A stretch of 38,962 nt of DNA from Octopus sinensis (lineage: Eukaryota), in assembly GCF_006345805.1 (NCBI RefSeq), contig NW_021835759.1:1-38962 (forward strand), given 5' to 3'. Shown one piece after another: positions 5,241 to 10,720 of the stretch (positions within the stretch are counted from its first letter, which is position 1; each line of letters starts with the position of its first letter). Position numbers and translations under genes: made by a program. The notes beneath the pieces were generated by a model. It worked only from the letters and a program-made list of their open reading frames with translations. It had not been told where the DNA came from and made no database searches.

Positions 5241-5275
5241 ACATACACACACACACACACACACACACCACACAT

Positions 5276-5317
<42 letters not shown>

Positions 5318-5494
5318 GTATATATTTATTGACATGTTGATATATATATTGATATACAGAGGGTTTTGTTTGTGATCTCCTATTTGTGTCAGGCCTCTGA
5401 AAATACGACGATTAACCAAGCTTATATGGCGTGTCGTTTATTTCCTGGCAGTTGTCCGAATCTCATTTTTTCAGACACATGAGACTAATAGCAG

Positions 5495-5739: not shown

Positions 5740-5905
5740 AACAAAAGAGGAAGACAGAGGTATGAACAACAAGCAGGTGCATTTGTTTGACGCTCGGGAA
5801 AGTGAGAAAGTCCTTTATGTTTCGAGCCTGCGCTCTTCAACAGAAACGGATGCGAGAAAATAGACAGAGAGGATATAAAAAATCTTGTGGATTTAGCGAT
5901 CAACA
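5740..5905 (-). repeat. Interspersed repeat family F (second copy 20875-21035) with HHR-like hairpin
   Basis: Both copies share gaagacag...acaacaa.cag.tg...tttcgagcc..cgctcttc.acagaaa...tagcgatc. Confidence 0.6.
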
Positions 5906-5907
5906 CA

Positions 5908-5944
<37 letters not shown>

Positions 5945-6305
5945 TGTTTTTATTGGCTAAACTGGCAAAATGACCATTCCGAAATATACAATATATAAAT
6001 ATATATATATATATCGTTTATCCGTAATAATGAAGGGTGAAATTAATTAATTGGAATATTATCAATTACACCAAGTAGTCGTCGGCATGTACAACGCCTC
6101 ATTCGAGGAAAATTTAAGTATACTAAGCAATAAAGGGTTTAGCAACGAATTGCCTTACACATACCGAATTTAGAAATAGCAGTCAAAGAGTTATAGCATT
6201 TCTTCTACTAAAAAGGGAGATCTCAGTAAAAACAGCAATTGGAAGGCAGACACAAACAGGTAGAGAGAATGAATTGACGGCAATCTATCATACAATTTTA
6301 AGTTA

Positions 6306-6406
6306 TCTACGGACGTACGTTTCGAAATCAAGTTTTTAGGAAAGCATAAGAATTAAATATTAAATAATTCTATCTTACCAAAAACTTCTTTTCTCTTCAG
6401 CGTAAA
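6306..6406 (-). ncRNA. Type I hammerhead ribozyme A1
   Basis: Reverse complement: TTTACG / CTGAAGA G-stem II-C / GAA AC-GTAC-GT C / CGTAGA. Stem I has one G-U pair; predicted cleavage between 6312 and 6311. Confidence 0.85.
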
Positions 6407-6899
6407 TACTATAATCATAAATGATTATATATTGAATTTTGAGATACTAGAAGGCACCAACTCAACTCAGTATCAGAGCGAGCGAGCTAGAATCCGCAAC
6501 TATTATCACCAAATTCAATGCGTGAATGAAAAGATTGTGTCCCCAGCCCCTTCCCACCCGCGTGTAGCCAAAACAAGATGCTGTGGTCATCTACTGAGAT
6601 AAAATATGGTTATCCGTAATAATGAAGGGTGAAATTAATTAATTTGGAATAATTATCAATTACACCAAGTAGTCTTCGGCATGTAAAAGCCTCATTCGAG
6701 GAAAATTTAAGTAATACTAAGCAATAAAGGGTTAGCAACGAATTGCCTTACCACATACCGAATTTAAAATAGCAGTCAAAGAGTTATAGCTATTTCTTCT
6801 ACTAAAAAGGGAGATCTCAGTAAAAACAGCAATTGGAAGGCAGACACAAACAGGTAAAGAGAATGAATTGACGGCAATCTATCATACAATTTTAAGTTA

Positions 6900-6999
6900 T
6901 CTACGGACGTACGTTTCGAAATCAAGTTTTTAGGAAAGCATAAGAATTAAATATTAAATAATTCTATCTTACCAAAAACTTCTTTTCTCTCAGCGTAGA
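6900..6999 (-). ncRNA. Type I hammerhead ribozyme A2, 1-nt core deletion
   Basis: Same as A1/A3 but the core reads CTGAGA(G); stem I TCTACG/CGTAGA is perfect. Confidence 0.7.
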
Positions 7000-7438
7000 A
7001 TACTATAATCATAAATGATTATATATTGAATTTTGAGATACTAGAAGGCACCAACTCAACTCAGTATCAGAGCGAGCTAGAATCCGCAACTAGTATCACC
7101 AAATTCAATGCGTGAATGAAAAGATTGTGTCACCAGCCCCTTCCCACCCGCGTGTAGCCAAAACAAGATGCTGTGGTCATCTACTGAGATAAAATATGGT
7201 TATCCGTAATAATGAAGGGTGAAATTAATTAATTTGGAATAATTATCAATTACACCAAGTAGTCTTCGGCATGTAAAAGCCTCATTCGAGGAAAATTTAA
7301 GTAATACTAAGCAATAAAGGGTTTAGCAACGAATTGCCTTACCACATACCGAATTTAGAAATTCGCTCTGATACTGAGTTGAGTTGGTGCCTTCTAGTAT
7401 CTCAAAATTCAATATATAATCATTTATGATTATAGTAT

Positions 7439-7539
7439 TCTACGCTGAAGAGAAAAGAAGTTTTTGGTAAGATAGAATTATTTAATATTTAATTCTTATG
7501 CTTTCCTAAAAACTTGATTTCGAAACGTACGTCCGTAGA
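7439..7539 (+). ncRNA. Type I hammerhead ribozyme A3, intact
   Basis: TCTACG(7439-44) CTGAAGA(7445-51) G...C(7452-7521) GAAAC GTAC GTC(7531-33) CGTAGA(7534-39). All conserved core nucleotides are present; stem II gaaaagaagttttt/aaaaacttgatttc pairs at 12 of 14 positions. Confidence 0.9.
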
Positions 7540-7733
7540 TAACTTAAAATTGTATGATAGATTGCCGTCAATTCATTCTCTCTTACCTGTTTGTGTCTGC
7601 CTTCCAATTGCTGTTTTTACTGAGATCTCCCTTTTTAGTAGAAGAAATAGCTATAACTCTTTGACTGCTATTTCTAAATTCGGTATGTGGTAAGGCAATT
7701 CGTTGCTAAACCCTTTATTGCTTAGTATTACTT

Positions 7734-10720
<2,987 letters not shown>

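What the first reader, a model, noticed from the sequence alone, without database searches (positions are those of the whole stretch)
6018..7733. Tandem-plus-inverted array of ~591-nt units, each carrying a type I hammerhead ribozyme (retrozyme/Penelope-like)
Seen: two near-identical tandem units, a partial third and an inverted 370-bp copy, flanked by (TA)n, with no ORF. A3 (7439-7539) has every canonical core nucleotide: CUGAAGA, G-C closing pair, GAAA, GUC site and 6-bp stem I. A1 is also intact; A2 lost one core nucleotide. Known: Penelope-like elements carry type I HHRs in tandem or inverted pseudo-LTRs, and non-autonomous retrozymes are tandem HHR repeats that release monomeric or circular RNAs. 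Inference: a minus-strand transcript cut at 6906/6905 and 6312/6311 would release a 594-nt monomer, larger than typical animal retrozyme units, suggesting a possibly undescribed cephalopod family.
Basis: partly seen in the sequence, partly recalled or inferred. Interest (0 to 1): 0.92.

Follow-up and report, generated by a model that had tools for sequence, protein, structure and literature searches.

The report
Octopus hammerhead retrozyme, Penelope-style insertion
This 1.7-kb repeat is one insertion of a young, non-coding mobile element whose ~591-base unit carries a hammerhead self-cleaving RNA motif, a new octopus family of the known animal "retrozyme" class, probably copied by Penelope-like retrotransposon enzymes.

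Summary
Window 6018-7733 contains two 591-594-bp tandem units, a partial third and a 371-bp inverted copy. It has (TA)n on both sides and no ORF over 59 aa. Two copies (A3, A1) carry a complete type I hammerhead (HHR). A2 has a one-base deletion in the CUGANGA box.

Rfam does not score the motif, because helix II is a 70-nt hairpin. The structure is nevertheless constrained. Genome-wide, helix I pair 2.6-1.6 reads U-A 619 times and C-G 325 times, against 10 mixed cases. Helix II pair 10.2-11.2 switches A-U to G-C 69 times, with 5 G.U and 0 A.C. Where the 7-nt box was left free, 98 of 99 listed family copies keep it, differing only at N7.

The family has about 2,000 units on all chromosomes and is 96-99% alike. 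Every 3' end examined abuts (TA)n. The 3' ends are fixed and the 5' ends are truncated at variable points. This is target-primed reverse transcription in the Penelope-like tandem/inverted style.

Self-cleavage, circular RNA and the autonomous partner are not shown. It is a new member of a known kind. This scan had already found sibling families elsewhere in this genome, on other DNA. The 591-nt unit lies within the published retrozyme size range.

The parts
5985..6015 (.). Left flanking (TA)n-rich target microsatellite
   Evidence: Read from the sequence. All 3' ends of family copies abut (TA)n.
6018..6608 (-). Tandem unit 1. It is the 3'-most unit on the element's sense (-) strand. Its outer end is the 'long' 3' terminus (unit position ~590).
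   Evidence: unit positions 1-590, 96.8% identical to unit 2.
6306..6406 (-). Hammerhead A1, intact core. Helix I carries a U.G where the other copies have C-G. H17 is 6312, so the predicted cut is 6312/6311.
   Evidence: Descriptor scan; sequence.
6900..7000 (-). Hammerhead A2. It has a one-base deletion inside the CUGANGA box, between 6989 and 6990; the rest is intact.
   Evidence: Most contigs of four organism labels read an extra base here (table 4). The window is a whole unplaced 39-kb contig, so an assembly indel is possible.
7200..7362 (-). 5'-truncated third unit (unit positions 431-591), joined head-to-head to the inverted arm
7363..7733 (+). Inverted, 5'-truncated copy (unit positions 125-491). 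Its outer end is the 'short' 3' terminus.
7439..7539 (+). Hammerhead A3, complete. Helix I 7439-7444/7534-7539; CUGAAGA 7445-7451; helix II 7452-7521; GAAA 7522-7525; palindromic helix III 7525-7532; C17 7533.
   Evidence: Cofold of two copies gives an 8-bp intermolecular helix III.
7734..7801 (.). Right flanking (TA)n target microsatellite
   Evidence: TRF.

Best explanation
The region is one insertion of a young, non-autonomous retroelement family with a ~591-nt non-coding unit. It belongs to the metazoan non-LTR retrozyme class, that is, Penelope-like-element (PLE) dependent elements.

Shown here:
- Each unit encodes, on one strand, a type I hammerhead. The hammerhead has a 6-bp helix I, an 8-nt palindromic helix III of the kind that works as a dimer, and an unusually long 70-nt helix II.
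- These helices are kept by compensatory substitutions across sublineages.
- The family is dispersed, at roughly 2,000 units.
- Copies have fixed 3' ends, variable 5' truncations and (TA)n at the 3' end, and occur as head-to-tail arrays and head-to-head inverted arms. This is the signature of target-primed reverse transcription in the PLE style.
- GIY-YIG reading frames up to 883 aa exist in the genome.

Inferred:
- Arrays are transcribed from the hammerhead strand.
- Two hammerheads pair through helix III and cut after C17, releasing 594-nt monomers.
- A host tRNA ligase circularises the monomers.
- A PLE reverse transcriptase/GIY-YIG endonuclease, acting in trans, nicks a (TA)n tract and copies the RNA. 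It goes round a circle or jumps between monomers, which yields multi-unit arrays.
- The second nick primes a second cDNA, which gives the inverted arm.
For: Motif. All core nucleotides, G10.1-C11.1, A15.1-U16.1 and C17 are present in A3 and A1. The descriptor found 0 hits in 300 shuffled windows.

Structure under constraint.
- Helix I pair 2.6-1.6: U-A 619, C-G 325, C.A 4, U.G 6.
- Helix II pair 10.2-11.2: G-C 69, G.U 5, A.C 0, against an A-U background.
- Further compensated pairs are visible in the rows. They include 10.3-11.3 and, in mid helix II, U-A to U.G to C-G.
- RNAalifold on 15 copies recovers helix I and helix II and leaves both core strands unpaired. All 90 helix I cells pair.
- With the 7-nt box left free, the first 100 rows gave 92 CUGAAGA, 6 CUGAUGA, 1 broken and 1 unrelated.

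Comparison with Rfam. Helix III has the same layout as the Rfam RF00163 consensus.

Predicted folds. The predicted dimer is -60.4 kcal/mol against -48.0 for two monomers, with an 8-bp intermolecular helix III. The circular 594-nt monomer folds with z = -3.9 at 34.5% GC.

Mobility.
- The unit gave 138 scored matches of 1,388 candidates at 96-99% identity on many chromosomes.
- Every 3' end abuts (TA)n. The 3' ends fall at unit position ~486 or ~590, and the 5' ends vary.
- All 14 clear head-to-head structures have one arm of each end type.

Other organisms. The family and its unit-to-unit junction are present in contigs of four organism labels.

Literature. PLE features, namely tandem/inverted copies, a one-sided tail and (TA)n bias, are in PMC8557442. 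The palindromic short helix III and dimer action are in PMC4209133. Retrozymes as PLE non-autonomous derivatives are in bioRxiv 10.64898/2026.07.22.740005.
Against: - There is no Rfam hammerhead hit, even at E<=10.
- Helix II is 70 nt, so the usual loop 1-loop 2 contact cannot be assumed.
- Self-cleavage was not tested.
- No run on record as RNA holds the unit. Only assembled contigs could be laid, and they show no pile of ends at the cut site.
- No PLE was found that shares sequence with this unit.
- Covariation counts follow sublineages, so they reflect a few events inherited by many copies.
- Indels are not enriched at the cleavage/ligation site, so a circular intermediate has no direct trace.
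Confidence: 0.78

Rival explanations
1. Same retroelement, but the hammerhead is not needed for spread. New copies are made from long read-through transcripts of existing arrays. The ribozyme fold is kept for another reason, such as recognition by the reverse transcriptase, or is slowly decaying.
For: - The 3' ends (unit ~486 and ~590) and the variable 5' ends do not coincide with the cut site at unit 294/295.
- There is no excess of indels at the cut site.
- Contigs bridge the cut site uncleaved (record 1 of X1).
- PLE hammerheads show low activity in vitro (PMC4209133).
Against: - Linear templates with 5' truncation can only shorten arrays. Yet young arrays of 7-8 units per arm exist (rows at C1:95.52 Mb).
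- The exact core is kept with only N7 varying, and the helices are compensated. This is the constraint pattern of a working hammerhead, not of a generic hairpin.
Confidence: 0.15
2. Ordinary satellite or segmental tandem repeat amplified at the DNA level. The hammerhead-like motif is a relic with no role.
For: The tandem organisation, AT-rich sequence and flanking microsatellites look satellite-like. TRF does not report the array because its period limit is 500.
Against: - Copies are dispersed over many chromosomes as short arrays.
- 3' ends are precise and recurrent at two positions, and 5' ends are variable.
- (TA)n lies at every 3' end.
- Inverted arms always carry one end of each type.
DNA-level amplification does not predict any of these.
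Confidence: 0.03
3. The hammerhead match is a chance resemblance inside a repeat.
For: No Rfam hit. The AT-rich helix II folds only moderately better than shuffles (z -2.5).
Against: - 0 hits in 300 shuffles.
- Controls read backwards gave 0-13 hits, against hundreds to thousands of real hits.
- Several independent compensated pairs.
Confidence: 0.02

Closest known systems
Metazoan non-LTR retrozymes (Cervera and de la Pena 2020, PMC7229834; Li, Clavereau and Pollet 2026, bioRxiv 10.64898/2026.07.22.740005)
   Same: Non-coding, low-GC tandem units, each with a type I hammerhead. Dispersed and multi-copy. Thought to spread through unit-length linear or circular RNA using PLE enzymes. The unit length lies inside the 51-972 bp range reported in 2026.
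   Different: The unit of 591 nt is above the 170-400 nt of the 2020 description. Helix II is a 70-nt hairpin instead of about 4 bp plus a loop. Expression and circles are not shown here. The host is a cephalopod; no paper in the searched library describes retrozymes in cephalopods.
Hammerheads in pseudo-LTRs of Penelope-like elements (Cervera and de la Pena 2014, PMC4209133; Craig et al. 2021, PMC8557442)
   Same: Type I hammerhead with a short palindromic helix III suited to dimer action. Insertions occur as partial tandems with an adjacent inverted 5'-truncated copy. An extension is present at one end only. There is a bias for (TA)n microsatellites.
   Different: There is no RT/GIY-YIG reading frame, and the repeat period is the 591-nt unit itself. 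The one-sided extension is about 105 bp (unit 487-591) rather than 30-40 bp. (TA)n bias was described for Naiads, which lack canonical hammerheads.
Rfam Hammerhead_1 (RF00163): newt satellite 2 and Schistosoma type
   Same: Same core, same 6-bp open helix I, and the same GAAAC-NNNN-GUC eight-base palindromic helix III layout. Canonical members exist in this genome.
   Different: It falls below the model's reporting thresholds. Helix II is A-U rich and about 60 nt longer.
Sibling octopus families noted earlier in this scan (units of about 349, 355, 484, 491 and 505 nt)
   Same: Same genome and same reading: a hammerhead unit with a Penelope-style insertion. One note mentions (TA)n targets and one a long helix II.
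   Different: There is no significant sequence similarity between the 591-nt unit and the other hammerhead-bearing loci I fetched. The stems and unit length also differ.
Plant LTR retrozymes (PMC4918200)
   Same: Non-autonomous, carry a hammerhead, and have circular RNA intermediates.
   Different: Plant elements have type III hammerheads inside true LTRs, with a primer-binding site and polypurine tract, and depend on Ty3-type enzymes. None of that applies here.

Membership tests
Hammerhead ribozyme, type I | Conserved core C3-U4-G5-A6-N7-G8-A9 and G12-A13-A14 | tested here: met
   Present in A3 (7445-7451, 7522-7524) and A1. A2 lacks one base. 98 of 99 listed family copies keep the box, and only N7 varies.
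Hammerhead ribozyme, type I | G10.1-C11.1, A15.1-U16.1 and a non-G nucleotide at the cleavage position 17 | tested here: met
   G7452-C7521, A7525-U7532 and C7533. All are invariant in 15 aligned copies.
Hammerhead ribozyme, type I | Three helices around the core with helix I open, supported by covariation | tested here: met
   Pair 2.6-1.6: 619 U-A, 325 C-G, 10 mixed. Pair 10.2-11.2: 69 G-C, 5 G.U, 0 A.C. RNAalifold recovers helices I and II. The counts follow sublineages, so they represent few independent events.
Hammerhead ribozyme, type I | Score at or above the Rfam RF00163 gathering threshold | tested here: not met
   No hammerhead hit at gathering score or at E<=10. The likely cause is the 70-nt A-U-rich helix II. 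Other long-helix II variants in this genome reach only 27-34 bits.
Hammerhead ribozyme, type I | Site-specific self-cleavage | not testable with these tools
   Needs in vitro transcription or raw RNA reads. Only assembled contigs were available.
Metazoan non-LTR retrozyme | Head-to-tail non-coding repeats, each unit carrying a type I hammerhead, with low GC | tested here: met
   GC is 34.5%.
Metazoan non-LTR retrozyme | Dispersed multi-copy family with marks of retrotransposition | tested here: met
   roughly 2,000 units, fixed 3' ends, variable 5' truncation.
Metazoan non-LTR retrozyme | Accumulates as unit-length linear and circular RNA | tested here: inconclusive
   Small contig sets guessed to be RNA hold the unit and bridge the unit junction. 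A tandem DNA or RNA template gives the same picture, and no listed holder is on record as RNA.
Penelope-like element (autonomous) | Single ORF with telomerase-like RT and GIY-YIG endonuclease | tested here: not met
   No ORF above 59 aa in the array. The period equals the 591-nt unit. GIY-YIG frames exist elsewhere in the genome.
Penelope-like element (insertion style only) | Partial tandems plus an adjacent inverted 5'-truncated copy, a one-sided extension, and a microsatellite target | tested here: met
   compared with PMC8557442. In all 14 clear inverted structures, one arm ends near unit 486 and the other near unit 590.

The most novel reading that the evidence does not exclude
The strict rule seen here may be a direct footprint of how Penelope-like enzymes integrate. 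In every head-to-head insertion, one arm ends at unit ~486 and the other about 105 nt further on, at ~590. Both ends abut (TA)n. The reading would be that the two 3'-OH ends of a staggered break in a (TA)n tract prime cDNA at two different, defined sites of a multimeric or circular hammerhead RNA. That would explain the long-puzzling one-sided 'tail' and the tandem/inverted pseudo-LTRs. Alongside this, the element's hammerhead would be an obligate dimer with a 70-nt helix II that dispenses with the usual loop-loop contact.
Probability: 0.25. Interest if true: 0.6.

Novelty: new member of a known kind. Interest (0 to 1): 0.4.

Why it matters
The finding adds a cephalopod family, with sister lineages of 583-606-nt units, to the animal retrozymes. 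It shows by covariation that a hammerhead with a very long helix II, invisible to Rfam, is under structural constraint. This suggests that covariance-model surveys undercount such ribozymes in invertebrate genomes.

The family is young and abundant, and its ends are unusually regular. That makes it a convenient natural data set for working out how Penelope-like enzymes build tandem and inverted insertions in (TA)n tracts. It does not reveal a new kind of system.

Tried and rejected
1. Rfam over the whole window at gathering score, and over 5900-7850 at E<=10, gave no hammerhead. The only hits were microsatellite look-alikes of miRNA families.
2. I looked for sequence similarity between the 591-nt unit and the other hammerhead-bearing loci fetched from this genome (canonical RF00163 hits and long-helix II variants). 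Nothing was significant.
3. I looked for excess indels at the predicted cleavage/ligation site as a trace of circular or template-jumped templates. There were 2 events in 66 copies, no more than at other positions.
4. RNA evidence: no listed holder is on record as RNA, and a second search restricted to libraries described as RNA listed none. Laid contigs show no pile of ends at the cut site and cannot separate circles from tandems.
5. Autonomous partner:
   - ORFs flanking family copies gave only a LINE-type RT and an APE endonuclease next to one array. These belong to an unrelated host element.
   - L079 turned out to be a fragment with an assembly gap.
   - A sister-lineage hammerhead lies 2.3 kb upstream of a GIY-YIG match on contig C4.
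6. Pfam on the eight longest window ORFs gave nothing.
7. Earlier findings searched by place (near) and by sequence returned nothing.

Full report
**What is in the window**

- There are two near-identical units, at 6018-6608 and 6609-7199.
- A third, partial unit covers 7200-7362.
- An inverted copy covers 7363-7733. Its arms are up to 143 nt long and 100% complementary to the units.
- (TA)n-rich sequence lies on both sides (for 7734-7801).
- No ORF in the region exceeds 59 aa.
- TRF did not list the array, because its period limit is 500.
- The window is the whole of an unplaced 38,962-bp contig of a 2.72-Gb, 13,516-contig genome. Earlier notes of this scan call the genome an octopus.

**The hammerhead motif**

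The elements of copy A3, on the + strand, are these.

| Element | Coordinates |
|---|---|
| Helix I (6 bp) | 7439-7444 with 7534-7539 |
| CUGAAGA | 7445-7451 |
| Helix II, closed by G7452-C7521 | 7452-7521 (70 nt) |
| GAAA | 7522-7525 |
| Helix III, palindrome ACGUACGU | 7525-7532 |
| C17 | 7533 |

- A descriptor scan I wrote finds only A3 and A1 in the window. A1 is on the - strand, with H17 at 6312. The scan finds nothing in 300 dinucleotide-preserving shuffles of the window.
- A2 lacks one base of the CUGANGA box, between 6989 and 6990.
- Most contigs from four organism labels carry an extra base at that place (table 4), and 58 of 59 close genomic copies have the full box. A2 is therefore a private defect or an assembly indel.
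- The single-strand fold gives helix I and a long helix II, with z = -2.5.

**Why Rfam is silent**

- Rfam gives no hammerhead, at gathering score or at E<=10.
- The same genome does hold canonical RF00163 members. Eight score over the cut-off, and the best reaches 48 bits. It also holds ~105-nt variants with long helix II that reach only 27-34 bits.
- The Rfam consensus models helix III as a four-pair palindrome, ACGcgCGU. The motif here has exactly that layout.
- The shortfall most likely comes from the 70-nt, A-U-rich helix II. This is an inference; I could not test it with an edited sequence.

**Is the structure constrained?**

The closest copies are too alike to say. I therefore searched the genome with patterns, which retrieved diverged sister lineages.

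- A loose core pattern gave 5,540 hits against 3 for the backwards control. It revealed lineages 80-94% identical to the unit.
- Helix I pair 2.6-1.6 reads U-A in 619 full motifs and C-G in 325. It reads C.A in 4 and U.G in 6.
- Helix II pair 10.2-11.2 reads G-C in 69, G.U in 5 and A.C in 0, against an A-U background.
- The rows show further compensated pairs:
  - 10.3-11.3 changes from A-U to G-C;
  - a mid-helix II pair goes from U-A through U.G to C-G;
  - another mid-helix II pair switches between A-U and G-C.
- On 15 copies held as loci, RNAalifold independently predicts helix I and helix II and leaves both core strands unpaired. All 90 helix I cells and all 60 helix III cells pair.
- A pattern that fixed only the flanks and left the 7-nt box free gave 1,935 hits. 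Its first 100 rows were 92 CUGAAGA, 6 CUGAUGA, one broken box and one unrelated hit. Only N7 varies at appreciable frequency. A third N7 state, G, appears in another sublineage.

These counts follow sublineages. They stand for a handful of events inherited by many copies, not hundreds of independent ones. Even so, several different pairs changed on both sides while the catalytic positions stayed fixed. That is what a working hammerhead predicts.

**Dimer and monomer folds**

- Two copies cofold at -60.4 kcal/mol, against -48.0 for two separate monomers. They form an 8-bp intermolecular helix III.
- This is the double-hammerhead arrangement described for metazoan and PLE hammerheads with a short palindromic helix III (PMC4209133).
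- The 594-nt cut-to-cut monomer, folded as a circle, has 67% of its bases paired, z = -3.9 against shuffles, and 34.5% GC.
- These values are compatible with the low-GC retrozyme RNAs of PMC7229834.

**A mobile family**

- The unit matched 138 scored places out of 1,388 candidates, at 96-99% identity, on many chromosomes.
- I mapped the unit onto 30 loci. On the hammerhead strand, the 5' ends of arrays fall at many different unit positions.
- The 3' ends fall at only two places: unit ~486 (486-495) or unit ~590 (588-591, sometimes plus one base).
- Every 3' end abuts (TA)n. Most 5' ends do too, but three do not.
- Arrays hold from one to at least seven or eight units per arm.
- Fixed 3' ends with variable 5' truncation indicate target-primed reverse transcription. 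They also mark the hammerhead strand as the RNA strand.
- The cut site at unit 294/295 does not coincide with either terminus.

**Inverted insertions follow a rule**

In all 14 clear head-to-head structures, one arm ends near unit 486 and the other near unit 590, never two of a kind. These are the window plus L006, L007, L008, L014, L015, L018, L019, L021, L025, L027, L028, L029 and L088; L085 and L078 agree with the rule. If each arm chose its end independently, at the frequencies seen in single-orientation arrays, this outcome would have a probability of roughly 3 in 100,000. That figure is my own estimate. In the window itself, the minus-strand arm ends at 6018 (unit ~590) and the inverted arm ends at 7733 (unit 491).

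Craig et al. 2021 (PMC8557442) describe matching features for Penelope-like elements:
- partial tandems;
- an adjacent inverted 5'-truncated copy;
- a short extension present at one end only;
- a (TA)n preference, in Naiads.

Here the one-sided extension would be unit 487-591, about 105 bp.

**Enzymes**

- The element encodes nothing itself.
- The genome has GIY-YIG matches in 147 scored places of 5,029 candidates. Some sit in open frames of up to 883 aa, and seven sit in frames of exactly 781 aa. Intact PLE-type genes are therefore plausibly present.
- Earlier notes of this scan mention young Hydra-clade PLEs inserted in TA microsatellites. I did not check them.
- I found no PLE that shares sequence with this unit.
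- One lead remains open. A sister-lineage hammerhead at C4:108,833,153-243 lies 2.3 kb upstream of a GIY-YIG match on the same strand. I could not fetch that DNA.

**Other organisms and RNA**

- Contigs of runs under four organism labels hold the unit and bridge the unit-to-unit junction.
- Two of these runs are small contig sets guessed to be RNA, but no listed holder is on record as RNA.
- Contigs cannot show ends or tell circles from tandems.
- Expression and processing therefore remain open.

**Comparison with what is known**

- The element works like the metazoan non-LTR retrozymes. It meets their structural definition: tandem non-coding units with a type I hammerhead, low GC, and dispersed copies with retrotransposition marks.
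- The RNA criterion is untested.
- It is not an autonomous PLE, but it shares the PLE insertion style.
- Its unit length is above the 170-400 nt of PMC7229834 and inside the 51-972 bp of the 2026 preprint.
- In the searched library I found no paper describing retrozymes in cephalopods. The giant squid genome paper lists 235 Rfam hammerhead_1 hits (PMC6962438). A 2026 Octopus vulgaris repeat annotation lists Penelope-like families but no hammerhead elements (PMC13282606).
- This scan had already reported sibling families with 349-505-nt units elsewhere in the same genome. The 591-nt unit shows no significant similarity to the other hammerhead-bearing loci I fetched.

**Verdict**

It is a new member of a known kind. 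The points of some wider interest are the Rfam-invisible long-helix II hammerhead backed by covariation, and the very regular two-terminus rule of the inverted insertions.

Noticed in passing
L048-L077 (e.g. L048:1500-1565 and 2848-2913; G000 contig C1): A different and far more abundant hammerhead-like family supplies most of the 5,540 hits. It has a 66-nt CUGAAGAG...GAAA core, a helix III palindrome ACACGUGU and an A at position 17. It often occurs as inverted pairs 0.2-1.3 kb apart, like PLE pseudo-LTRs.
   Followed up: partly
L053:1486-1590 and L089 (G000 C1:2.78 Mb and 12.24 Mb): Another family shares 75-78% identity with unit positions ~397-583, the region holding both 3' termini. Its hammerhead stems are quite different (helix I ACUGUG/CACAGU). 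This suggests a shared 3' module, perhaps the part recognised by the reverse transcriptase.
   Followed up: partly
G000 C4:108833153-108833243 (+) and C4:108835540-108835803 (+): A sister-lineage hammerhead (C-G form of helix I) lies 2.3 kb upstream, on the same strand, of a GIY-YIG match in a 337-aa open frame. This may be an autonomous relative. The DNA could not be fetched.
   Followed up: no
G000, places listed: Seven GIY-YIG matches sit in open frames of exactly 781 aa, and one sits in a frame of 883 aa. This points to young, possibly intact Penelope-like elements.
   Followed up: no
L038, L043-L047: These are RF00163 matches of 103-109 nt, with about 60 nt inserted in helix II (GACCC...GGGUC stems). 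They score 27-34 bits. Long helix II is recurrent among the hammerhead families of this genome.
   Followed up: partly
L002:2-1408 (-) and L003:2494-3018 (+): A LINE-type reverse transcriptase fragment (RVT_1, E 1e-14) and an APE-type endonuclease fragment flank one three-unit array. That array sits among unrelated LINE remains.
   Followed up: yes
window 6018-6608 versus 6609-7199: Many of the differences between unit 1 and unit 2 that I saw when reading one search are one-base length changes in short runs, including the A2 core deletion. The window is a whole unplaced contig, so some may be assembly errors rather than mutations.
   Followed up: partly
L082, L083, L087, L091 (G000 C1): A sister lineage has 599-606-nt units, is 91-94% identical, and carries 7-14 extra bases (repeats of a short AU-rich motif) in the helix II loop. 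It also has A1.4 changed to G, giving a U.G pair in helix I. Another lineage (rows) has a ~584-nt period.
   Followed up: partly
window 5241-5356, 7855-7912, 8571-8930: There are dense (AC)n, (AT)n and (CA)n microsatellites around the insertion. Rfam's weak miRNA 'hits' here are microsatellite artefacts.
   Followed up: yes
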